A stretch of DNA of 64,000 nucleotides, taken from the NCBI GenBank assembly GCA_001179505.1, contig CDMY01000243.1, positions 186,001-250,000 of the forward strand. Reading direction: 5' to 3'. Shown piece after piece: positions 7,901 through 54,012 of the stretch. The first letter of the stretch is position 1, and each line of letters starts with the position of its first letter. Below the pieces are notes generated by a model. That model had not been told where the DNA came from, searched no databases, and worked only from the letters and a program-made list of their open reading frames with translations. This DNA is from Vitrella brassicaformis CCMP3155 (Eukaryota > Protista > Chromerida). Both the position numbers and the translations under genes were made by a program.

Positions 7901-10876
7901 CTTTATGGGATCATGGCGTCGGCCGGAAAGGGTGAAGCACCATGGACAGCAAGGCATGTATCGAAGCATGGGTGGGTGTTGTGTGTGCAGTTTCGGCGGC
8001 GATTCTAGCCACGGCAACTGGGATTCGCTGATGAATCTCTGGGCTCTAGAAACGAACATCAGAGTAAGCCACGCTGACCGTTCTATGCCAACGATACTTC
8101 TTCTTTCACTGATGGTGTCTTGTCTTCTTGCTCAGAACGGCGCTAAGGACGCGGGCATGCCTGACGACTTTCGCTTCGACCTGCTGTCATTCGACGCATG
8201 CCTGATGGCGTCTTATGAAGTCACAACGGCCCTCGCATCACAAGGACACTTCTTTCTCGGTCGGTGAATACCACCCATATCATGCACAGAAAGACAGCTA
8301 GTCAGAATCATGTCTGTTTTCAATATCAATCATGGTCCTCCTTCTGTTCTGCGTGTACGCGTCCAGGCAGCGAGACCCTCATCAGCGGCACTGGCTGGGA
8401 CTGGAAGTCGCTGAGACCCACACAGCCGAACGGCACGGCGACGCCGCCATTGGAGTACGCCAGAAAGATCGCCTTGGCGACGATGGACTTGTACGTGCGC
8501 AAAGAGCGCCTGATGACTCTCGCCATCGTGGACCTCTACAAGATCCTGGAGTTCCGCAAAGCCTTCGCCCAACGCCAGAGGACGCTGACCAAACGCCTGC
8601 ACGATTGCGTCGATACGAAGGAGGTCGATCGCATCCGGACGGCTTACCAGAGGGCCGACGACAGCCTGCGAGGCCGCCAGGCGTCGCTATTTAGCGGGGA
8701 GATAGTGAATCCGGTGGACATGGGTATGCTGCTGCAGTTCTTGGAGGCCGAGGTGGAGCGGGTGATGCCTGCCGACGAGCTCGATTCTTTTTCTTTCAAG
8801 GTACAGGAAGTAGAGTTAGTGTAGAATGCATGGGTGAATGGAAAATGTGTTCTCAGGACGCCATCAAGAAGTACAACGAGAGCATCGTCTACTTCAACGG
8901 CTCGGACAACTTCGGCAACATCCCCCTGACCGGTGAGGGAGTGGGGATATGGGTAGGTTCATGAAGCAAGCTGCAGTGTAGATTGTCATTCATGTCTCGT
9001 GTTTGTCAGGTTTGCACGCTGATTTGACTCTGGAAGAGCCGGTCACTTCCCGCTTGCTTGAGGCAGATGAGCATTCCACCAGCGAGGCGCCGGCATCTGA
9101 TGCTCGCCAGCTGCAGGACGACGCCGCCAAATGGGGAGCAGGCATCGTAAGGCAGCACGTACACTCACTGGACAGAGAGACCTTTGCTATGTCGTGTTCG
9201 TTGCTGCCTCGCTGCGCAGAGCGACGACCCGAACTGGCAGAGCACCGGCACGCCGAACGACCTGCGGGTCTTTCTCGAGCCCATCTACGATACCAAGCGC
9301 ACCGTGTGTCGGGCGAGGAAGGGTCCACCGGAGCTCCAGCCCAAGTTTGTCATGCTCAACTGTACGCTCTACCTCATGAGCAGTGCGGGGCAGGAGGCCG
9401 ACAGCACTGCGGCAGCGCCGCGCTACCGTGTGGAGGTCTTCAGAAACACTTCCAGCGGAGCCGCGGCATACACGGTCAGTGAGGCAGACGGGGCCATGAA
9501 CACTACTGTCTGTGTATCTATCGAGCATCCTGTCCTTCTTATGCCGTTCAGGCCCTGAAGACGATCATGACCAAGCCCAAACCCGAGAATGATGGCAAGT
9601 TCCAGCAGGCGTTTGTGGTGACAGCGGAGCAGTCGCCTGACAAGGATGAGCTGGCAGATTATGTAATCGACCATGTGACGGCCGAGTGGGAGGGCGAAGG
9701 CTGGATCCTTCATCAGAGCCTCTGGACGGAGATGGAGAAGTTTACGAAACGGGGAGACTGCAAGGCTCCCTCATGGATCCGACAGTGCCCGGCGGGATTT
9801 GGCGATGCAGTGCCCGCACGCCCGGCCACTAATGAGGGAAGCGACCGCACATTCGAGCGCCAGTGCGTGTGGCTGAGTGCGCTGGCGTCCAAGCAGAGCA
9901 ACGAGCAGAGCAACGGCGCCACCCGGCGAACCCTGCAGATCCCCGCCCGCCTCTATCGGAGCTTCACCGACTTCACTCGCCAGGTGAAGGACGCCCGTCG
10001 CGCCAGGCTGGTGATCGACTACAACGCCAAGAGTCCCGACGAGAGCCGCCTGTCTCTCTTTGCTGCCAATCGCTTTGGCGTCGAGGCGGAGGTGTCCTCA
10101 CAGGATTGGGGGCTGATCGAGCCGCTGCACACGTACGTCAATCTCACGGCGGTCGACGGGTCGGGTCGATATGACATGGCCCCTGACGACGCGGAAAGCA
10201 TCCAGTCGGACGTGCCGTCGTGCTTCGCATTCATGTAGGCGGACGGAGAGAGGGAGAGGCAGATGCACATACACAAGTGCATACATCGGCTTACGATGAC
10301 GAGTCCCTCATTTGTGTGGGTGCTGTGCAGGTGGGGATCTGATCCTGAGGCTCCTGAACGTGAGGCAGACAAAATCGAGGTACTGCAGTGGCCGCCAGCT
10401 GGCAGCGGGACACCAGGACAGGCAGAAGAGGCCGAAGACGGAGATTCTCGACGGGCTCTGCAAGATACTGACGACGACAAGCGTGGTACGCACTGCTATG
10501 GCATGACATATCCGATTATATACTTCACCATCTCTCCTTCTTTCGCTCTCTCTCTCTCTCTGTGTGTGTGTGTGTAGAGCGTGTGTTGGGCATCAAAGCC
10601 AAGGAGACCATAGGCGCGACGCCGAAAGTGATTGGCAGTTTTGTGGTCCTCTCAGAGGCCAACTCACAGCAGCGGCACACCAACACGGGCTGTTCGGAGT
10701 ACGAGAAGGACCCGACGGCCTACTGCAAGACGTGTGACGCACTTGCTTTGCTGGGCGAGGCGGACTGCGCCAGAGAGGAGGATACGCTTGGGTGCAGTGA
10801 TATTTGTGCACGGTTCTGTGAGGGCAACCCATGTGCAAGAAGGCTGGCTGGGGTGGGTGGGTGGGTGTGTCAGTGA
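4968..10876 (+). CDS. Large secreted multidomain protease: Asp-box/kelch-like beta-propeller + thrombospondin type-1 repeat + Cys-rich region + clostripain-family (C11) peptidase + C-terminal extension
   Basis: Asp boxes DVWRSDDLGVTW and YSPDGGKTW. TSR: CEQSAWSEWSQCDGQRTRNRT...NGGEPC...ETENC. C11 motifs: YMNADNNLESYAMSDLKEM, FPAEHYALTLWDHG (His codon 7912-7914) and FDLLSFDACLMASYEV (Cys codon 8199-8201). Start and last-exon assignments are approximate. Confidence 0.8.
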
Positions 10877-46136: not shown

Positions 46137-47256
46137 AGATCCGCTTCAGCTTGTCTGAGAGGATTTACCGCGAGGAGACGTCTGCTGGGGAGCATTAGAA
46201 GGAAGCATTAGCAAGCAGCGCACGCATGCGTCCAGCCATGCATCCGTCGTGCGCGTCATGCGTGGGCGAACCAATCACACGCATACACGCGCGCGCAGGC
46301 ATGCACTCATGCACCACTCGCCGCATCGACGTACACGGGAAAACCACAGGCTCCCACCGCGCACCGCACCGCACCGTCCACCCATCCGTCCGTCCGCACA
46401 TATCCCAGCTGGCAATGGATGAATTAATTGGCGTACGTGGTGCATACATGCGGTCGGTGCACATGTGGTGCGCTATATATAGACAGGGAACACACACACA
46501 CACACACACACAATACATTGTCAAATTGCATTCGCAGCAGCTGAGTGAGTGAGTGAGTGATCGAGTCAGTCAGTCAGTGGGTTGGGTGAGTGCACTCCCC
46601 TGGCTTCGCTTCAACTCTGTCTGTACAACGGTTGTCACTCCAACGTACGGCATGAAGGGCAGCCAGCCAGCCAGTAAGAAAGAGCCAGAATCCATACGCA
46701 CACACCGTCAGAGGTGGGCGCGGCGCCCGCCCGAACACTCACTGACTGAATTGACCGAATTGATTGATTGACAGACATTGACAGGCAGGCACGCAGATGA
46801 AAGAAAGAGCGACAGACCCCGCCGGCGCCGCGCCCCCGACACCGACCGCACCCAAAAGGTCAAAAAGCACTGTCAATGGATGATTACTTCAGCCCTTGAG
46901 TCAGTCAGCTTTGGCAGCTCCCACGCACCGAACCGCACCGCACCGCACGCACCCAAGCAAGCACGGCACGCACATCGACTCCACCGAAGAAAGCAACCCC
47001 ACCCCTGTGTGCTGTGCGGCCCTCTGCCGCGTCTCCTCCTTGCCTCCCTCCTCCCATCCCTCGTGCCGTCATTCACACCGACCTGACCTCGTTTGCAGCA
47101 GACAGACAAAAAGAGCCAGCCATGGAATGAATCGATTCGTCCCTTGATCCATCCATCCATCATTCCATTCAACAAAACACTTATGTACTTATCGACACAC
47201 CAGGGCCTAGACCATCCATCCATCCATCGGTCGCTCCTTCACAACACTCGCTCTCT

Positions 47257-50200
47257 CTACGCCTGCACCTTCTCCTTCCCGCCGCCCTCTCCCTCTCCCT
47301 CTCCCTCCCCGCTTCTTTCGTCCGTCTCGACCGAATCCTTTTTCTCAGCACTCTTGCCACTGTCACTGTCGGCTTGTTTCAGCTGCTGAGTGGTGCCCTT
47401 GAGGATGGCTAACGCCTTGTCCATGGCCTCCTCGGGTGTTGTGGCGATGTGGACGAGGCCGCCCTCCACGAGCCCGTCAGTCCACGCCGACCGGTACTGC
47501 CGGATCTTGCCGTAGTTGTTGTCCAGGATCACGTGAGGCTTCCGCATCAACGTGCACAGAATGTGCGCGTGGAGGCGATCGGCCACGACCACCTGACACA
47601 CACACACACACACACACACAGCCAGCCGGCCAGGGTGCAGGGCAGGGTGCATCTGCGGCTCGGTGTTGTCGGGTCGGTTGGCCGCTCATGACTGGCTCAC
47701 ATTGCCTCTGGCGAGGAACTGCAGGCCCCTGTTGAGTCGCGATTTGGTGACGACGGTCTGGAAGAACTCGTACCCCTCGCCGTTGCGGACTGGGTACTTT
47801 TCGCGCCACTTGATGTTGGTGCTGTTGTAGCTCACCCAGTCGTCCTGCTTCACTTTCACGCCCTTGGGCGCTGGCGGCAGCTTGTAGTCCCTTTTCTCGC
47901 GATCAGTCCGCTTCACCCACAAGATGTCATACGTCGGAGAAATCGGGGGCGGCTGAAACAGACAGACCCACACACACAACCACAGAGAGACAGAGATCCA
48001 CAACTGCTCGTGTGTGGGCCAAATGGCCTCCCCTGGTTACTCACCGTGACGCCCATCATGAAAGCGGAGTCCGGGAGCATGTAGGCCATCTTGTACTCAA
48101 AGGGGCACTGCATCAGCCACTCGTAGCTGGGGATGTCCCGGGCGATGAAGGATATGTTGGGGTGCCGCATCTTCTCGGCGTGAGCCACCATCGTGTCGTC
48201 GTGCTCGAACTTGATGGTCTGTGGGAAGACGACGATGGGGTACTCGGGGTGGTCCCGGAACCTGGCCACGAGACGCTCGCGGTCGTCCACGTACTTTTGC
48301 CAGATGTCGCCGAAGTTGCCGCCGCCCGTGTAGAAGATGATGAGTGGGTCGTCTGACGACTGGGCCACCCGCAGCGCCTCGTCGTAGTCGCAATCCTCCG
48401 CCAGCTTGGGCGCGCAGAAATGCACCACTTCCAAGCCCAGCTTCTGCACAAGCAAGTGTGGATGCCATGCATGGGCACACAGAACCGTACACACGCACAC
48501 GAGCAGATGGATGGGGTGGATGTGGGAGTGTTGTTGTGTGGGTATGGGCTGTGCTGGGCTGTGCTGGGTCGGTTGGCTTGCCTTGAGGACGAGGTATTGC
48601 CCGTAGTTGATGGCGGCGTCGCCCTTGTTCTCGTGGTCGGCCAGCCCAAACATCATGGCCCGCTTGTACCCCTTGACCAGCTGATTGACAGACAGAAGAC
48701 ACACACATGGCATGGTCCATACACAGAGCGCTTCTGTCGGGTCGGTTGCTCTCTTTCTCTCTTTCTGTCGTTGAGTGATGTCCAGTGCTCACCGCCGAGT
48801 AGGCGTCGATCATGGCCTCCTGCTGCGCCCCGATGACCCCCTCCCACGTCCTCTCCTCGAGGATCTTCTGCGACACCGCCATGGTGCGACTCCTCTCCGC
48901 CTCGTCTACCCTCGGCGCCACCGCAGCTGCACCCTGCTGCTCGCCCCCGACCTCCTGCGCCTGCTCGCCCTGCTCTGGTGGCTGCTGGTCCTCTGCTGGT
49001 GGGGGTGGCGGTTGTTGATCCCCATCGCCATCGCCACTGCTGCCCTGAGGCAGCGCCATGGAGGCGGCAGCAACGTTCTGTGACACGACCTTCTCTTTGT
49101 CCGCCTCCTCCCCGTCTGCTGCTGCTGGTGGGGCTGGTGGTGGTTGTGGTTGTGGCTGTGCGTCAGCTCCTGCGCCGCCAGTATTTGCGGGCTGCTGCGG
49201 CGCTTTGGCCTTGCCCTTGAGATTGGCGGTGGCGACGGTTGACGCGCCGAGGAGGGAGTTGAGGTTCTCGGGGGAGGCGATGTTCTTGATGGCCTCCATG
49301 ATGGGCGCGTCCGAGCTGCAACGGGTGGCAATCGCTGTCGACACACACAGACCAGACAGACAACAGGTGTGTCGGTAGGTGGCTGGCTGATGTGACGGAC
49401 GGACGGATGTGTGTGCGTACCTGTGTGCCAAAAGACGAGGCAGACGACGAGCGCGCCGAGAAGAGACCACCAGTTGGGATACCTGCCGCCGCCCTGCGAG
49501 GCATGGCCCTTCAGCACCTCCTTCTCAGGCGCCTTCTTCTGAGCAAACCAACACACCAACGACAATCAAGCAGAGACCATCCATCCATCCATCCATCTCG
49601 CCCCCTCGCTGACCGGTTTGGCGGATTTGCTGAGGTGCAGGCCGATGATGGCCATGAAGGAGCCCAGGATCTGCACGCCCGTCGGCAGCCCGCACCGCAG
49701 CACCTCGGCGGTAATGATGATGACCGCCCGCTTGACGGCGTTGAAGTAGGCGTGCACTATGGGGCTCGACACCATGGCCAGGAACCCCAGCGAGGCCATG
49801 TTGTAGGTCGAGTGGAACAAGCCGGACAGCAGGGCGGGGGGGATCGACACACTCGTCGGCGCGGCCCCCACCATGAAGAGGCAGAGGGAGATGAGGCACG
49901 CCACACAGCACCCCAGCACCGACAGGACGAAGAAAGGGATGGTCGCACCCTCCCCCTTCTTGGACACCAGCACGTTTCTTAGAGAGATGGAGAGAGCCCC
50001 CAGGAGAGCGAAGAACACCGCAATCAGCGACCCCGACCCGCCGGAGCCCCCCTGCACCGTGTCGTGCACCACAAGGATGATCCCAAAGCTCGAGAGCGAC
50101 AAGGCGGCGATCTGTGCAGTGGGCGCCGCTGTCCCCGCGATTAGCCATGCGAGGATGGTGGTAATGATGAGCTCGGAGCACTTGATGATCTGGACCAGCA

Positions 50201-50849
50201 GCACCCGCCCGCCGCCCAGCGCTGTGTTGGCGCATATGTTGGCGAGGGCGTACAGACAAGAGCTGAAGAAGAAGTCGAAGTTGAGGAAGCGCATGAAGGT
50301 GCCTCTCACGCCTTGTCCCTCAAAGAGGCTCTTGCGATAGAAAAGCAGGAAGGGTATGGCGAAGAATCCCGCCACGCAGAGCTGCAGGGAGGTGACGAGG
50401 GAGCCGAAGAAGACCCGGTCCGCCAGGGACATCTCGGTGGACGAGGGCCTGAGCGCCGTCTTGGTGATGACGCTGTGCATCGCACTCCCCAGGTACCAAC
50501 ACACGATCACGAAAATCTCCAGCACCAGTCCCCTCGCCTCCATCGTGCTTGCTGGCTCTGGCTGCTGAGAAGAGGAGTGCGGCTGAGAGGCTGAGGCTGC
50601 CCCCCCGCTCACGGGCTCGGTCTTGTGCTTGTTGTAGTGGTAGCGAATGAGGAGAGTCTCCCCGCTGTGTGTTCGAATGATGGTCTTGTTTGTTGACGTG
50701 TAGACGACGGTTGACGCTTTGCAGGCCGCCCCGCTGCCGCTGCCGCAGCCAGTCACCAGAGGTGAAGTCGGGGCTGTGGTTGACGATGGAGGTGTGCTTT
50801 TCTCGGAAGCCTTCTCACGTCCACGTCTGACTGATGGCCGGAGCAGCAT
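47257..50849 (-). CDS. Fusion: TPT/PPT-family (SLC35-like) transporter + TM anchor + linker + polysaccharide pyruvyltransferase (Pvg1/EpsI-like), 7 exons; 891 aa from ATG 50543 (993 aa from ATG 50849)
   Basis: Exons 50543-49614, 49538-49421, 49334-48793, 48680-48582, 48443-48045, 47952-47701 and 47592-47257 join in frame. Transporter motifs: QIIKCSELIITTIL and HAYFNAVKRAVIII. Pyruvyltransferase motifs: HENKGDAAI, GGGNFGDIW, FPQTI, ARDIPS, LPDSAF, DRLHAHIL, DNNYGKI. Confidence 0.88.
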
Positions 50850-51116
50850 CCACGCACACCATTTCTGACGCGCGCACCTTTTTGGTCCCACAACCAATTC
50901 ACAAACCCCACAAACCCAAAACCCCAATCCCTAGCTAAACCCAGCTTTGTTCGACCAGTGGCCCCCGGCGATCTTAACCAGCTCGAAAGATGACTGGTCG
51001 TTCTTAGGGTTTGTCGAACTGGCTGCGGCGGGGAAGGGCAGCTTATAGACTCACCCACAGCGGCACACTACAGCAAGGTCTGATTTGGATCTGTGTGAAG
51101 GCGGTGTTTTCTCGCG

Positions 51117-54012
51117 ATGGGGCTCACTACGATCCAAATCAAAAGCCTTGCCATGCTGGCAATCCTCGTCGTGGCGCACTGTAAGCGAGAAGGGGCAGGG
51201 TCAGGGTCACTGGGCAGACAGCGGGCAGACAGGATCTTGCATTCAGCTGTAGATGGCTGCAGTCAGACACCCCTGGGGGGTGGATGAGAGGGGAGTGAGA
51301 GGGGCGCTCAGCTTCACTTTGTGTGACTCTTGACCTTCACTTGCCATCCATCCACCATGGGCACACCTGAGCACCTTGATGATATGCATCGCAGCGACAC
51401 ACAATGCATCCATCAGGCGTGACAGATCTCTCGTAATCGGCGTTCTCTCTTATGGTCTGGTATGTGTGTGTGTGTGTGTGTGACTCTCAGGCCACGACGC
51501 GTCCCGCATGACTGCTTTCATCAGGGGCACCCCCCTGACCCGCAAGGTCGGCGGTGACTTTGCCGGCACCGGGCTCGTCTCGGGCAGCAACAAACAGGTC
51601 GGTGGGAGACGGCGCACACGGGTCAATCAGATCAGATCAGCGGGTGATTGCTCGACATTCCTTTCATGACTGTGTCTCTTATATCGGGGTGTTGTGTGTG
51701 GTGCAGTGCGTCCGTGTGTGCGGTGAGGGCCCGACTTGCGTGCGGATGGCTTTGGATCAGTCCAACCGCTACGTCAAGCTGGACCTGGACGAGGAGACCC
51801 TCATGAGGAATCAGCAGCACGTCCTCGTCGCATACCACATGCGACCCAAGTACCCCATCGCCAAGGACTTCATCAGGTGGGTGGGATAAGAGGCTCACCA
51901 CCCAAACCAGCCCCCACACATTGTTTTTGAGTCCTTGTGTGATGTGTGTGTGTGTGTGTCAGTACCGCCGCCCACTTTGCTGCCGAGTCGTCCACCGGCA
52001 CCAACGTCAACGTCTGCACGACCGACGACCACACCATCTCTGTCGACGCCGTCGCGTACGAGCTGGATGAGGAGAACGAGCTCATGAAGATCGCCTACCC
52101 CGTCAAGCTCTTCGACCGCAACATCACTGACGGACGGGCGATGCTCTGCTCCATCCTCACTCTCGTCATCGGCAACAACCAGGTGCGTGCGCTGCCCACC
52201 TACCTTGATGGATGACACACGCGAGCATGTGTCTCATTCATTATCCGTCTGTCGTGCTGTGTGTTGTGTGTTGTGTGTTGTGTGGTGTGATGTGTTCGTT
52301 CGTCTGGCCTCCTGCCTGCCTGCAGGGTATGGGTGACGTCGAGTACGGCAAGATCATGGACATCTGGTTCCCCCCTGACTTCGTGCGTCTGTTCGACGGC
52401 CCCGCGGTGGACATCCGTCACATGTGGCAGGTCATGGGCCGCGAGACCGTCCCCTACGACCCCACCACGGGCAAGACCGACTGGGACGGCGGCTTCGTCG
52501 TCGGCACCATCATCAAGCCCAAGCTCGGACTGAGGCCCAAGGAGTTCGCTGAGGCCGCCTACCAGTTCTGGCTCGGTGGCGACTTCCTCAAGAACGATGA
52601 GCCGCAGGTGCGTACAAGGCAGGCAGGCAGGCAGGGGACATGTCACAAGTGGATGGGTGATCGGACTGATGGACTGACGGATGGATGGATGGATGGATGT
52701 GGTGTTTTCGTGTGCTGTGTTATGTGTCTGCAGGGCAACCAGACCTTCTGCCCGATGCGGGAGGTCATCCCCATGGTGGTCAAGTCGCTCAAGAGGGCAA
52801 TGGCTGAGACCGGCCGCCGCATGTTCTTCTCCGCCAACATCACCGCCGACGACCCCGATGAGATGATCGCACGCGGCAAATACGTCCTCAGTACGCGCAC
52901 ACAGACGGGAGGGAATCAATCCATCAAGGAATCGCTCGTCGCACAGATCCTCGTGTGTGTGTATGTGTCGGTTGATGTGATGTCATGTGTGTGCAGGTCA
53001 GTTTGATCACCTGGCGGAGCAGTGCGCTCTCCTGGTGGACGGTTTCGTGGCTGGCCCCACGGCCGTGGCGACAGCGCGCCGCAACTTCCCCCGTCAGTGG
53101 CTGCACTACCATCGCGCCGGCCACGGCATGATCACCTCCCCCCAGACCCAGCGAGGCTACACCGCCCTGGTGCTCTCCAAGTTCTCGCGATTGCTCGGCT
53201 CGTCGGGTATCCACGTCGGCACCATGGGCTTCGGCAAGATGGAGTCAGAAGCCAGCGACCGGTCAGTTAATGAGACACACACACACACACACACACACGC
53301 GGATGGATGGATGTGCAGTGACATCGTGTACATGCTTGAGAGGGATGTGGCGAAGGGCCCGTACTTCACGCAGCAGTGGGCCAACATGAACCCCACCACC
53401 GGCATCATCTCTGGCGGCATGAACGCCATCCGTATGGTCAACTTCTTCACCAACCTCGGCCACGCCAACGTCGTCATGACCTGCGGTGGCGGCTCATACG
53501 GCCACGTCGACGGCCCCTCGGAGGGCGCCAAGTCCTGCCGACAGGTCCGCTGACCTGACCACACCATCACAACACAATCGTCCCACGAGCGCCCAGTGGC
53601 CACCAGCAACATGTTGTGTTGTGTTGTGTTGTGTTGGTCGTTGATTGATCAGGCCTGGCTGTGCTGGAAGGAGGGTGCCGATCCCCTTGAGTTCGCCAAG
53701 CGCCCCGAGAACCGCCAGTACGCCCGCGCCTTCATTTCCTTCGCCGCCGACTCTGACCAGATCTACCCCACCTGGAGGAAGGAGCTCAGGGGCATCCATG
53801 ACATCACCGGTGAGTCGTCAAGAAAGACACGGGCCATACGCGCACACGTCGGTCGACCCCTGATCATGTGACTGACCCACGTGTGTGTGTGTGTGTGTGT
53901 GCGTGCAGGCGAGGAGGGTATGGAGAAGATGGAGCAGGTGCTCAAGGTGGACATGGGCCGCAGTCAGGCAGTGGCCAAGGGCGTCCAGGCCTTCGACGCC
54001 TGGGGCAACTAG
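51117..54012 (+). CDS. cbbM: Nuclear-encoded Form II RuBisCO, single unit with a ~70-aa bipartite plastid leader, multi-exon
   Basis: Leader [22 protein letters not shown]...TAF...CVRM, then ALDQSNRY. Motifs: [76 protein letters not shown]. Confidence 0.97.

What the first reader, a model, noticed from the sequence alone, without database searches (positions are those of the whole stretch)
47257..50849. PEP-type transporter fused to a pyruvyltransferase: a candidate self-supplying glycan-pyruvylation machine
Seen in sequence: the ~10-TM transporter ORF has a gtcagc donor right after SAKP (49613). A 75-nt (GGAT)n intron leads to an exon encoding KKAPEKEVLK...R-WWSLLGALVVCLVFWHT (an extra TM preceded by basic residues), then a 180-aa linker and a complete pyruvyltransferase. 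All six introns keep the frame. The unspliced stop (49566) lies inside the intron, and the TM exon has no in-frame ATG of its own, so two separate genes fit poorly. Established: ketal pyruvyltransferases (S. pombe Pvg1, bacterial EpsI/CsaB) use phosphoenolpyruvate, and S. pombe imports PEP into the Golgi through separate TPT/PPT-like Pet transporters. The HxxxNxVKR and IKxxE motifs are TPT-family signatures. Inference: one polypeptide imports PEP and presents the catalytic domain in the lumen via the 11th TM, implying pyruvylated glycans in this alga. I do not know of a characterised fusion like this, though automated domain databases may list the architecture.
Basis: partly seen in the sequence, partly recalled or inferred. 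Interest (0 to 1): 0.92.

Follow-up and report, generated by a model that had tools for sequence, protein, structure and literature searches.

The report
Phosphate-translocator fused to pyruvyltransferase
One spliced gene of the alga Vitrella brassicaformis joins a phosphate-translocator-type membrane transporter to a fission-yeast-type sugar pyruvyltransferase; Chromera, Piridium and the parasite Cryptosporidium carry the same join, which suggests that these cells import phosphoenolpyruvate into the secretory pathway to add pyruvate to glycans.

Summary
All six introns are spliced out in assembled RNA contigs from four runs (three complete, one partial), including the critical 49614|49538 junction. 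One mRNA therefore encodes the transporter, an 11th TM helix, a disordered stem and the pyruvyltransferase. The window is Vitrella brassicaformis CCMP3155.

The same fusion occurs in Piridium, Chromera and at least nine Cryptosporidium species. It also occurs in unnamed metagenomic organisms, where it is a single uninterrupted ORF.

A profile of the transporter domain matches the plastid triose-phosphate/phosphate translocator structure 5Y78 (E=3e-34, against 1e-9 for the next hit). It keeps all four phosphate-binding residues. The enzyme domain matches S. pombe Pvg1p (E=5e-37) and keeps its three proposed catalytic residues.

Chromera carries a different pyruvyltransferase subfamily behind an orthologous transporter, so the pairing was kept through a domain swap or arose twice.

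The best reading is a PEP/Pi antiporter tethered to a lumenal ketal-pyruvyltransferase. PEP specificity and Golgi location are inferred, not shown. By synteny the C. parvum ortholog is cgd7_2583, which is female-specific. I found no paper describing the fusion. The scan's four other pyruvyltransferase notes on this genome concern other loci.

The parts
49614..50543 (-). It encodes a 10-TM DMT/pPT-type transporter, residues 1-310 of the 891-aa protein.
   Evidence: PF03151. The profile hits 5Y78 at E=3e-34. The AF2 model has 10 helices and Foldseek gives TMt 0.78 to 5Y78. K121/Y247/K271/R272 correspond to Lys204/Tyr339/Lys362/Arg363.
50544..50849 (-). It is probably 5' UTR.
   Evidence: Homologues (Piridium, Cryptosporidium) and the NCBI/UniProt model start at the equivalent of Met103. 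The transcript reaches 50921. An out-of-frame ATG at 50862 precedes it.
49539..49613 (-). Intron 1, 75 nt, GT..AG, containing (GGAT)n and the stop that would end an unspliced transporter ORF (49566-49568).
   Evidence: It is removed in RNA contigs of X1, X6 and X7, whose record positions are contiguous across 49614|49538. It is present in DNA-like runs.
49421..49538 (-). Exon 2: a K/R-rich cytosolic loop plus the 11th TM helix (signal-anchor-like).
   Evidence: Hydropathy peak at residues 335-353 and model helix 332-355. The loop has 6 K/R. An equivalent hydrophobic segment follows TM10 in every fused homologue.
48793..49334 (-). Exon 3: low-complexity Pro/Gln/Ala/Gly-rich stem (disordered) and the N-terminal helices of the enzyme domain.
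   Evidence: pLDDT is below 50 for residues 342-490. No Pfam hit. The Pvg1p alignment starts at residue ~513.
47257..48680 (-). Exons 4-7 (48680-48582, 48443-48045, 47952-47701, 47592-47257 including the stop) with introns 4-6. They encode the Pvg1-like ketal-pyruvyltransferase domain.
   Evidence: PF04230 scores 73.1 bits over residues 548-806. 5AX7 hits at E=5e-37. D551/R665/R786 correspond to Pvg1p D106/R217/R337. The junctions are seen in RNA contigs.
49335..49420 (-). Intron 2, 86 nt, GT..AG.
   Evidence: Joint 49334|49421 is listed in X1, X2, X6 and X7.

Best explanation
One mRNA encodes a single membrane protein of 891 aa (or 993 aa if the upstream ATG is used). It has four parts.

1. 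A 10-TM transporter of the plastidic-phosphate-translocator type (DMT superfamily), without plastid targeting.
2. A basic cytosolic loop and an 11th TM helix that carries the chain across the membrane.
3. A ~140-aa disordered stem.
4. A Pvg1p-like ketal-pyruvyltransferase on the lumenal (non-cytosolic) side.

The architecture amounts to a transporter's cytosolic C-terminus joined to the cytosolic tail of a type II Golgi transferase.

Proposed mechanism: the transporter exchanges cytosolic phosphoenolpyruvate for lumenal phosphate one for one. The tethered enzyme transfers the pyruvyl group from PEP to a sugar diol (probably galactose-type) on a glycan and releases phosphate, which is the transporter's counter-substrate. 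Supply and by-product removal are therefore stoichiometrically closed within one polypeptide.

Shown here: the spliced fusion mRNA; both domain identities; conservation of the phosphate-binding and catalytic residues; conservation of the architecture across genera; and its persistence with two different pyruvyltransferase subfamilies.

Inferred: PEP as cargo, strict antiport, Golgi/ER location, the acceptor glycan, and the protein remaining uncleaved.
For: Fusion mRNA. RNA contigs X1, X6 and X7 are continuous across all tested junctions, including 49614|49538.

Independent genomic support.
- In a Cryptosporidium-like contig (L001) the transporter and TM11 lie in one ORF. A 52-nt GT..AG intron then joins in frame to the enzyme.
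- P0008 and P0011 are uninterrupted 1112- and 1105-aa ORFs with both domains.

Architecture in Piridium, Chromera and Cryptosporidium spp..

Transporter.
- The profile hits GsTPT2 5Y78/5Y79 at E=3e-34, against 1e-9 for SLC35B1. No Vrg4 or CMP-sialic-acid-transporter chain passes E 0.01.
- Foldseek ranks 5Y78 first among transporters, TMt 0.78.
- Lys204/Tyr339/Lys362/Arg363, the mutationally essential phosphate ligands (bioRxiv 10.1101/169169), are invariant in 18 relatives.
- Phe263, whose bulk disfavours PEP in TPT and which is Asn in AtPPT1, is Ile here and Ala in the Babesia apicoplast translocator.

Enzyme.
- The only PDB sequence hit is Pvg1p, E=5e-37.
- D106/R217/R337 (PMC4872226) are conserved.
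- Ketal-pyruvyltransferases use PEP and release phosphate (PMC8615578 abstract; PMC6801904).

Topology. K/R counts are 10 on the predicted cytosolic loops and 3 on the lumenal loops. A basic loop plus TM11 is present in all fusions.

Functional coupling. Chromera's transporter is inside the Vitrella/Cryptosporidium clade (support 99/98). Its enzyme module belongs to another PF04230 subfamily, shared with P0008 and P0011 (E=4e-34 and 2e-46, against 0.013 to Vitrella).

Precedent. S. pombe uses separate Golgi PEP transporters Pet1p/Pet2p with Pvg1p (PMC6801904).
Against: - No transport or enzyme assay exists.
- PF03151 is only marginally above threshold (30.9-34.8 bits against 30).
- The residue that binds the C1 carboxylate in TPT (His185) is Asn here, so the organic-moiety pocket differs from every characterised pPT. 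Specificity cannot be read from homology.
- The more distant fused clade keeps Phe at position 263.
- The structure model is only moderate (mean pLDDT 65, pTM 0.42). TM11 and the stem are low-confidence.
- Logan contigs drop rare variants, so a minor intron-1-retaining isoform (transporter alone, stop at 49566) cannot be excluded.
- Orthology to S. pombe Pet1/Pet2 was not tested.
- No pyruvylated glycan has been reported for Vitrella or Cryptosporidium in the papers searched.
Confidence: 0.6

Rival explanations
1. The fusion is real, but the transporter carries something other than PEP. It might carry another phosphorylated C3 or sugar phosphate, or mainly export the phosphate produced in the lumen, with PEP entering by another route.
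For: Only the phosphate-binding tetrad is conserved. The organic-moiety ligands differ: His185 is Asn and Thr188 is Ala. Non-plastid KR-type relatives (SLC35E, Sly41) are as close structurally as the PPTs and have no assigned cargo in the hit list.
Against: The fused enzyme needs PEP and produces Pi. pPT-type carriers are strict 1:1 exchangers, so Pi export needs an incoming phosphate ester. The pairing with a PEP-using enzyme is kept with two unrelated PF04230 subfamilies. Phe263 is replaced by a smaller residue in the Vitrella clade.
Confidence: 0.2
2. The transporter is a nucleotide-sugar transporter that supplies the acceptor-building glycosyltransferases (for example UDP-Gal) rather than the pyruvyl donor.
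For: PF03151 also covers nucleotide-sugar transporters. The protein-atlas feature neighbours are generic NST/DMT clusters. P0008 additionally carries a GT32 glycosyltransferase module.
Against: The profile-to-PDB E-value is 3e-34 for the phosphate translocator. The Vrg4 and CMP-sialic-acid transporters do not pass E 0.01. The Lys-Arg pair that binds phosphate is invariant. From my own knowledge, Knappe et al. 2003 report that NST-type homologues carry KT/KD/KV there.
Confidence: 0.07
3. The two halves act as separate proteins, produced by intron-1 retention, an internal start or post-translational cleavage in the disordered stem. On this reading the fusion is only a co-expression device.
For: A 140-aa disordered linker is a plausible protease site. 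C. muris and C. serpentis are annotated as two adjacent genes. Contigs cannot exclude minor isoforms.
Against: No RNA-like run gave an intron-1-containing contig. Exon 2 has no in-frame ATG, and the first Met after it lies beyond TM11, so a separate product would be cytosolic. TM11 lies in the same ORF as the transporter in Cryptosporidium. Single ORFs exist in P0008 and P0011. Even if the stem is cleaved, the enzyme is made as a lumenal domain of the same precursor.
Confidence: 0.08
4. The protein sits in the plasma membrane or a wall-forming vesicle membrane rather than the Golgi. There it would pyruvylate extracellular or wall polymers in situ.
For: No localisation data exist. The C. parvum ortholog, assigned by synteny, is female-specific alongside oocyst-wall genes.
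Against: Its closest characterised relative, Pvg1p, is a Golgi type II enzyme fed by Golgi Pet transporters. The TM-stem-catalytic layout is the Golgi transferase pattern. This rival changes the location, not the mechanism.
Confidence: 0.1

Closest known systems
S. pombe Pvg1p (PDB 5AX7) with the Golgi PEP transporters Pet1p/Pet2p
   Same: The enzyme domain aligns to Pvg1p over ~330 residues (E=5e-37). It shares D106/R217/R337, GGGNFGD and DRLHAHIL(S/C)TLM. It has the same TM-stem-catalytic layout and the same logic of PEP import plus lumenal pyruvyl transfer. S. pombe C83.11 (Pet2 from my memory) is among the structural neighbours of the transporter domain.
   Different: In fission yeast the transporter and the enzyme are separate genes. 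Here they are one polypeptide joined through an extra TM helix. Orthology of the transporter to Pet1/Pet2 was not tested. The acceptor-subsite residue H168 of Pvg1p is Tyr here.
Plastidic phosphate translocators (GsTPT2 5Y78/5Y79; plant TPT/PPT/GPT/XPT; apicoplast pPTs)
   Same: It has the 10-TM DMT fold and gives the best PDB match by sequence profile and by structure. The Lys204/Tyr339/Lys362/Arg363 phosphate site is conserved.
   Different: There is no transit or bipartite leader, and the protein is present in plastid-less Cryptosporidium. His185 is Asn, Thr188 is Ala and Phe263 is Ile. An 11th TM and an enzyme are appended. Only 16 proteins in 1.84 billion representatives match at E<=0.001, so this is a small divergent clade.
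Golgi nucleotide-sugar transporter plus glycosyltransferase pairs (Vrg4, CMP-sialic acid transporter, SLC35 family)
   Same: The superfamily and the cell-biological logic are the same: an antiporter brings in an activated donor and removes the phosphate-containing by-product of a lumenal transferase.
   Different: The substrate site is of the phosphate-translocator type, not the nucleotide type. The donor is PEP. I found no report of such a pair fused in one chain.
Cryptosporidium parvum cgd7_2583 (formerly cgd7_2580 + cgd7_2590), 'polysaccharide pyruvyl transferase'
   Same: It is the probable ortholog. L001 carries the fusion next to an FtsJ methyltransferase, a 735-aa gene and an S33-type hydrolase. 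This matches the gene order cgd7_2570, cgd7_2560, cgd7_2550 in the paper's gene lists. Cryptosporidium proteins are 33-34% identical over the whole protein, and 44-52% in the best BLASTP alignment, which covers about a quarter of the query.
   Different: It is listed in the literature only as a female-specific pyruvyl transferase possibly linked to the oocyst wall (PMC6877471). The transporter half and its meaning are not mentioned. The C. parvum sequence itself was not examined here.

Membership tests
pPT-type phosphate translocators (TPT family PF03151, DMT superfamily) | Pfam PF03151 match above the gathering score | tested here: met
   34.8 bits on exon 1 and 30.9 bits on the 891-aa protein, against a cut-off of 30. 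This is marginal. Relatives reach 57-110 bits.
pPT-type phosphate translocators (TPT family PF03151, DMT superfamily) | 10-TM DMT fold with both termini on the same (inside) face | tested here: met
   The AF2 model has 10 helices before TM11. Foldseek to 5Y78 gives TMt 0.78 and rmsd 4.1. K/R bias is 10:3. GsTPT2 topology is given.
pPT-type phosphate translocators (TPT family PF03151, DMT superfamily) | Phosphate-binding tetrad Lys204, Tyr339, Lys362, Arg363 (GsTPT2 numbering) | tested here: met
   The equivalents are K121, Y247, K271 and R272. They are invariant in all 18 aligned relatives.
pPT-type phosphate translocators (TPT family PF03151, DMT superfamily) | His185 ligand of the substrate's C1 carboxylate, as in TPT | tested here: not met
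   Asn102 is at that position in Vitrella and in nearly all fused relatives. The Babesia apicoplast TPT keeps His.
pPT-type phosphate translocators (TPT family PF03151, DMT superfamily) | Plastid targeting (transit peptide or bipartite leader) | tested here: not met
   The conserved start is immediately before TM1. The optional 102-aa extension has no hydrophobic signal segment. Orthologs exist in Cryptosporidium, which has no plastid (established knowledge).
pPT-type phosphate translocators (TPT family PF03151, DMT superfamily) | Strict 1:1 phosphate / phosphorylated-metabolite exchange; PEP as substrate | not testable with these tools
   This needs a proteoliposome assay.
Pvg1-like ketal-pyruvyltransferases (PF04230) | Full-length PF04230 match | tested here: met
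   73.1 bits over residues 548-806 and profile positions 1-279 of 280, against a cut-off of 25.3.
Pvg1-like ketal-pyruvyltransferases (PF04230) | Proposed catalytic and PEP-binding residues D106, R217, R337 of Pvg1p | tested here: met
   D551 (NKGD), R665 (ARD) and R786 (DRLH) align to them. H788 is invariant and R786 nearly invariant in 17 fusions.
Pvg1-like ketal-pyruvyltransferases (PF04230) | Fold like the solved enzyme | tested here: met
   The Foldseek top hit is 5AX7 at E=2.6e-11 and TMt 0.52. The top Swiss-Prot hit is Q9UT27, Pvg1. The TM-score is modest.
Pvg1-like ketal-pyruvyltransferases (PF04230) | PEP-dependent pyruvyl transfer to a glycan | not testable with these tools
   This needs an enzyme assay (phosphate release, MS or NMR).
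S. pombe Pet1/Pet2 Golgi PEP transporters | Orthology or closest-relative relationship | tested here: inconclusive
   S. pombe C83.11 is structural hit rank 8 (E=2.6e-7), no better than plant PPT, GPT or SLC35E. No Pet sequence was available for a tree.
Nucleotide-sugar transporters (Vrg4 / CST / SLC35A-D) | Closer to NST structures and motifs than to phosphate translocators | tested here: not met
   The profile E-value is 3e-34 for 5Y78. SLC35B1 scores 1e-9, and Vrg4 and CST chains are absent at E<=0.01. Foldseek ranks them below 5Y78.

The most novel reading that the evidence does not exclude
A previously undescribed class of 'self-supplying' glycan-modifying machines: a PEP/Pi antiporter covalently tethered to its lumenal pyruvyltransferase. 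It would have been kept through chromerid-apicomplexan evolution, rebuilt with two different pyruvyltransferase subfamilies, and retained by plastid-less Cryptosporidium. There it is switched on in female gametes and would make an as yet unidentified pyruvylated (acidic) oocyst-wall or surface glycan. The fusion would also assign, by guilt of covalent association, a substrate (PEP) to an orphan clade of non-plastid phosphate translocators.
Probability: 0.45. Interest if true: 0.85.

Novelty: new variant of a known kind. Interest (0 to 1): 0.72.

Why it matters
- Donor-transporter and transferase pairs are the basic unit of Golgi glycosylation, yet I found no described case where the two are one polypeptide. 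This fusion is a natural 'Rosetta stone' linking an orphan clade of phosphate-translocator-like carriers to PEP supply for glycan pyruvylation.
- It predicts pyruvate-ketal glycans in chromerid algae and in Cryptosporidium. In Cryptosporidium no wall polysaccharide has been identified (PMC6877471), and the probable ortholog is female-stage specific. This gives a concrete, testable lead into oocyst-wall chemistry and transmission biology.
- It offers a compact two-in-one module for engineering sialic-acid-like negative charge onto glycans, an aim already pursued with Pvg1p (PMC4872226).

Tried and rejected
- A single-sequence search of the transporter against the PDB found nothing relevant. It needed a family profile.
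- Two of the three word-indexed homologue searches were nearly empty (1 and 3 hits). The profile of full-length fusions gave 13 hits, which added six further Cryptosporidium species. The exhaustive representative search was the one that first revealed the family.
- Because one search returned no named stand-alone transporters, I could not build a tree with plant PPT/TPT, Sly41 or S. pombe Pet1/2. The question 'PPT-like or Pet-like?' stays open.
- The protein-atlas feature search gave only generic DMT/NST clusters.
- I considered a gene-prediction or read-through artefact. I rejected it because of the spliced RNA contigs and the single-ORF homologues.
- I considered a plastid envelope translocator. 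I rejected it because there is no leader and because of the Cryptosporidium orthologs.
- I considered that Chromera's model might be a chimera of two genes. This is unlikely, because its post-TM11 module also matches the region that directly follows TM11 in the single-ORF protein P0011 (E=8e-6).
- The joints table of read laying omitted the intron 1 and intron 6 junctions because of a repeat filter. I read them from the contiguous record coordinates in the table of contig pieces instead.
- The organisms behind P0008, P0009, P0011 and P0015 were not identified.
Full report
**The sequence observation**

Seven exons give an open 2982-nt reading frame of 993 codons: 50849-49614, 49538-49421, 49334-48793, 48680-48582, 48443-48045, 47952-47701 and 47592-47257. 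The six introns are 75, 86, 112, 138, 92 and 108 nt. Five are GT-AG and intron 4 is GC-AG.

Intron 1 begins gtcagc directly after ...SAKP, carries a (GGAT)n run, and contains the stop (49566-49568) that ends the mechanical ORF 49566..50927. Exon 2 has no in-frame ATG. It encodes KKAPEKEVLKGHASQGGGRYPN followed by WWSLLGALVVCLVFWHT.

**Is it one transcript?**

The look-up of sequencing runs returned runs holding 66-100% of the sampled words. I laid their Logan contigs on 46800-51400.

- X1 record 2 (3024 nt) and X6 record 17 (3809 nt) consist of the predicted exons in order with contiguous record coordinates. For X1, 49614-50921 is record 1-1308 and 49421-49538 is record 1309-1426. For X6, the break is at 1296|1297.
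- Joints 49334|49421, 48680|48793, 48443|48582 and 47952|48045 are listed explicitly.
- The intron 1 and intron 6 joints were dropped by the repeat filter, but they follow from the record coordinates.
- X2 gave only a partial contig that covers the downstream junctions.
- A second call added X7, a 4932-nt contig of word depth 605 that is spliced at both 49614|49538 and 49421|49334.
- X3, X4, X5 and X8 run through the introns and have contigs of up to 225 kb, so they are genomic DNA.

No RNA-like run produced a contig containing intron 1. Because contigs drop rare variants, a minor retained-intron isoform cannot be excluded.

**Identity of the locus**

An exhaustive phmmer search with exon 1 against 1.84 billion representatives found only 16 proteins at E<=0.001. 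It is CEL96597.1 / UniProt A0A0G4EJC2 of Vitrella brassicaformis CCMP3155, named 'unnamed protein product / uncharacterized protein'.

Homologues from Piridium and Cryptosporidium begin at the position of Met103. I therefore take the ATG at 50543 as the likelier start. The transcript reaches 50921, and an out-of-frame ATG at 50862 precedes 50849.

**Domains**

Pfam on the public protein gives PF03151 (TPT) over residues 11-304 at 30.9 bits, against a cut-off of 30. Exon 1 alone scores 34.8 bits. PF04230 (PS_pyruv_trans) covers residues 548-806 at 73.1 bits and spans the whole 280-position profile.

**The fusion is conserved**

Pfam scans of the long hits, together with cluster names and a profile search, show TPT followed by PS_pyruv_trans in these organisms:

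- Piridium sociabile (837 aa);
- Chromera velia Cvel_22205 (1080 aa);
- Cryptosporidium canis, andersoni, ubiquitum, meleagridis, chipmunk genotype I, ryanae, felis and xiaoi (949-1001 aa);
- four unnamed metagenome or Logan proteins (P0008, P0009, P0011, P0015).

C. muris and C. serpentis are annotated as two adjacent genes.

A 95-kb Logan contig (L001, 32% GC, ~76% identical to C. canis) carries the transporter and the extra TM helix in one ORF (8001-9593). A 52-nt GTAGGT...TTAG intron then joins in frame to the enzyme ORF, which runs to 11001. P0008 (1112 aa) and P0011 (1105 aa) are single uninterrupted ORFs on 62-kb and 23-kb contigs. The architecture therefore does not depend on eukaryotic gene prediction.

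**What kind of transporter**

The single sequence finds nothing useful in the PDB. A 12-sequence profile of the transporter domain hits the Galdieria triose-phosphate/phosphate translocator GsTPT2 (5Y78/5Y79) at E=3e-34. The next hit is SLC35B1 at 1e-9. Vrg4 and the CMP-sialic-acid transporter do not pass E 0.01.

In the structure paper (bioRxiv 10.1101/169169), phosphate is bound by Lys204, Lys362 and Arg363 through ionic bonds and by Tyr339 through a hydrogen bond. All four are strictly conserved in plant pPTs and are needed for Pi/Pi exchange. From the HMMER alignment and the chain offset of 89, these correspond to K121 (IIKCSE), Y247 (TYNMAS) and K271-R272 (NAVKRA) of the Vitrella protein. 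They are invariant in all 18 relatives aligned.

The organic-moiety pocket differs:

- His185 is Asn102. This Asn is shared by nearly all fused proteins but by none of the non-fused relatives, where the Babesia apicoplast TPT has His.
- Thr188 is Ala.
- Phe263 is Ile186 in the Vitrella/Piridium/Chromera/Cryptosporidium clade. It stays Phe in the distant fused clade and is Ala in Babesia.

The paper attributes TPT's poor PEP transport to a clash with this Phe, and PPT's preference for PEP to its replacement by Asn. A smaller residue here is compatible with PEP but is not proof.

**What kind of enzyme**

Residues 500-891 hit exactly one PDB sequence, S. pombe pyruvyltransferase Pvg1p (5AX7), at E=5e-37 over 332 residues. 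[quoted passage not shown] H788 is invariant and R786 nearly invariant in 17 fusions. The acceptor-subsite residue H168 is Tyr, so the acceptor may differ.

**Structure and topology**

An AlphaFold2 model built from a 17-sequence alignment is of moderate quality (mean pLDDT 65, pTM 0.42). It shows ten helices at pLDDT ~60-90, an 11th helix at 332-355, a disordered stretch at 356-490, and an alpha/beta domain at 494-850.

Foldseek against the PDB ranks 5AX7 first and 5Y78 third (TMt 0.78), ahead of all nucleotide-sugar transporters. Against Swiss-Prot it ranks Pvg1 first, then EpsO, then SLC35E1, plant PPT/GPT, S. pombe C83.11 and Sly41 at similar E-values.

Loops predicted to be cytosolic hold 10 K/R against 3 in the others. 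Six of those lie in the loop before TM11. GsTPT2 has both termini on the inside face. With both transporter termini cytosolic, TM11 must carry the enzyme to the lumenal or exoplasmic side. A basic loop plus a hydrophobic segment follows TM10 in every fused homologue. The layout equals a transporter whose cytosolic tail continues into the tail-anchor-stem-catalytic pattern of a type II Golgi transferase such as Pvg1p.

**Independent evidence for functional coupling**

The lumenal part of the Chromera protein is not detectably similar to that of Vitrella (BLASTP E=0.013, confined to the RxH motif). It matches P0008 (E=4e-34) and P0011 (E=2e-46), including the module just after TM11 (E=8e-6). Yet a maximum-likelihood tree of the transporter domains places Chromera inside the Vitrella/Piridium/Cryptosporidium clade with 99/98 support (branches are long and the outgroup positions unresolved).

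So a pPT-like carrier is found fused to two different PF04230 subfamilies. Whether this arose by domain replacement, by two fusions or by reciprocal paralog loss, selection has kept 'this transporter plus a PEP-using pyruvyltransferase' together. P0008 adds a GT32 glycosyltransferase module behind the pyruvyltransferase.

**Mechanism proposed**

Ketal-pyruvyltransferases use PEP and release phosphate (PMC6801904; PMC8615578 abstract). pPT-type carriers exchange a phosphorylated metabolite for phosphate 1:1. The simplest model is PEP in, pyruvyl transfer, Pi out, all within one polypeptide. It mirrors the separate Pet1p/Pet2p plus Pvg1p system of the fission-yeast Golgi.

The steps shown here are the fusion, the domain identities and the conserved residues. 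PEP specificity, antiport, compartment and acceptor are inferred.

**Link to Cryptosporidium biology**

Tandel et al. [quoted passage not shown] Their supplement places cgd7_2583 (older cgd7_2580 and cgd7_2590) after cgd7_2570 (FtsJ methyltransferase), cgd7_2560 and cgd7_2550 (S33 hydrolase).

In L001 the fusion is followed by an FtsJ gene, a 735-aa gene and an abhydrolase. By synteny, cgd7_2583 is therefore the probable ortholog.

Both old halves rise from about 0.2-5 (asexual) to 5-10 (female) in the supplement's expression table, which I take to be log2 units. The paper does not mention the transporter half. I did not examine the C. parvum sequence itself.

**Literature**

Full-text searches were run for these term sets:

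- pyruvyltransferase + PEP transporter + Golgi;
- pyruvyl transferase + Cryptosporidium;
- the two gene ids;
- PF04230 / PF03151;
- Vitrella + pyruvyl;
- nucleotide-sugar transporter fused to a glycosyltransferase domain.

None found a description of this or an analogous transporter-transferase fusion. The library lacks most subscription journals, so this is absence in what could be searched.

**Other notes of the scan**

Four unchecked notes on other pieces of the same genome mention further pyruvyltransferase genes: clusters with glycosyltransferases, a PvT-GT8 fusion and a double-PvT protein. If right, Vitrella has a large pyruvylation toolkit that would need lumenal PEP. I did not test them.

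**Verdict**

The gene is publicly annotated but uncharacterised. The fusion and its meaning appear undescribed. It is a new architectural variant built from two known families, with a specific and testable mechanism.

Noticed in passing
window 51041-51520, + strand: A very highly expressed neighbour (contig word depth 280-609, against ~19 for the fusion gene) starts about 120 bp from the 5' end of the fusion transcript on the opposite strand. It has a GT..AG intron at about 51181-51490, since the loose end at 51181 continues at 51491. The two genes are a head-to-head pair and probably share a bidirectional promoter.
   Followed up: partly
window 47144-47235, 49570-49607, 51340-51360: (GGAT)n/(ATGG)n microsatellites recur in the 3' UTR, in intron 1 and upstream of the gene. 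Many unrelated contigs end or branch at 47212-47229, so the motif is dispersed genome-wide in Vitrella.
   Followed up: no
L002 6001-9339 (P0008); L003 2531-5848 and L004 930-4247 (P0011): Intron-free 1105-1112-aa ORFs encode transporter + TM11 + a second-type pyruvyltransferase + a GT32-like module. P0008 scores for Gly_transf_sug and Gb3_synth. In P0011 and P0015 the aligned region has lost the DxD motif. They lie on gene-dense metagenome contigs of 40-47% GC whose organisms are unidentified and whose neighbouring genes mostly lack Pfam hits.
   Followed up: partly
P0007 (Chromera velia Cvel_22205) versus P0002: The transporter domains are orthologous (41% identity, same clade), but the lumenal enzyme modules belong to different PF04230 subfamilies. 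This indicates a domain swap or reciprocal loss between the two chromerids.
   Followed up: yes
P0006 + P0023 (C. muris CMU_034680 / CMU_034670); C. serpentis P0024 + P0025: The two halves are annotated as separate adjacent genes, whereas C. andersoni has one 1001-aa model. The split models probably miss a short intron like the 52-nt one in L001.
   Followed up: no
window 48582-48581 boundary (intron 4, 48444-48581): Intron 4 uses a GC donor (AAG|GCAAGC), and the junction is confirmed by RNA contigs.
   Followed up: yes
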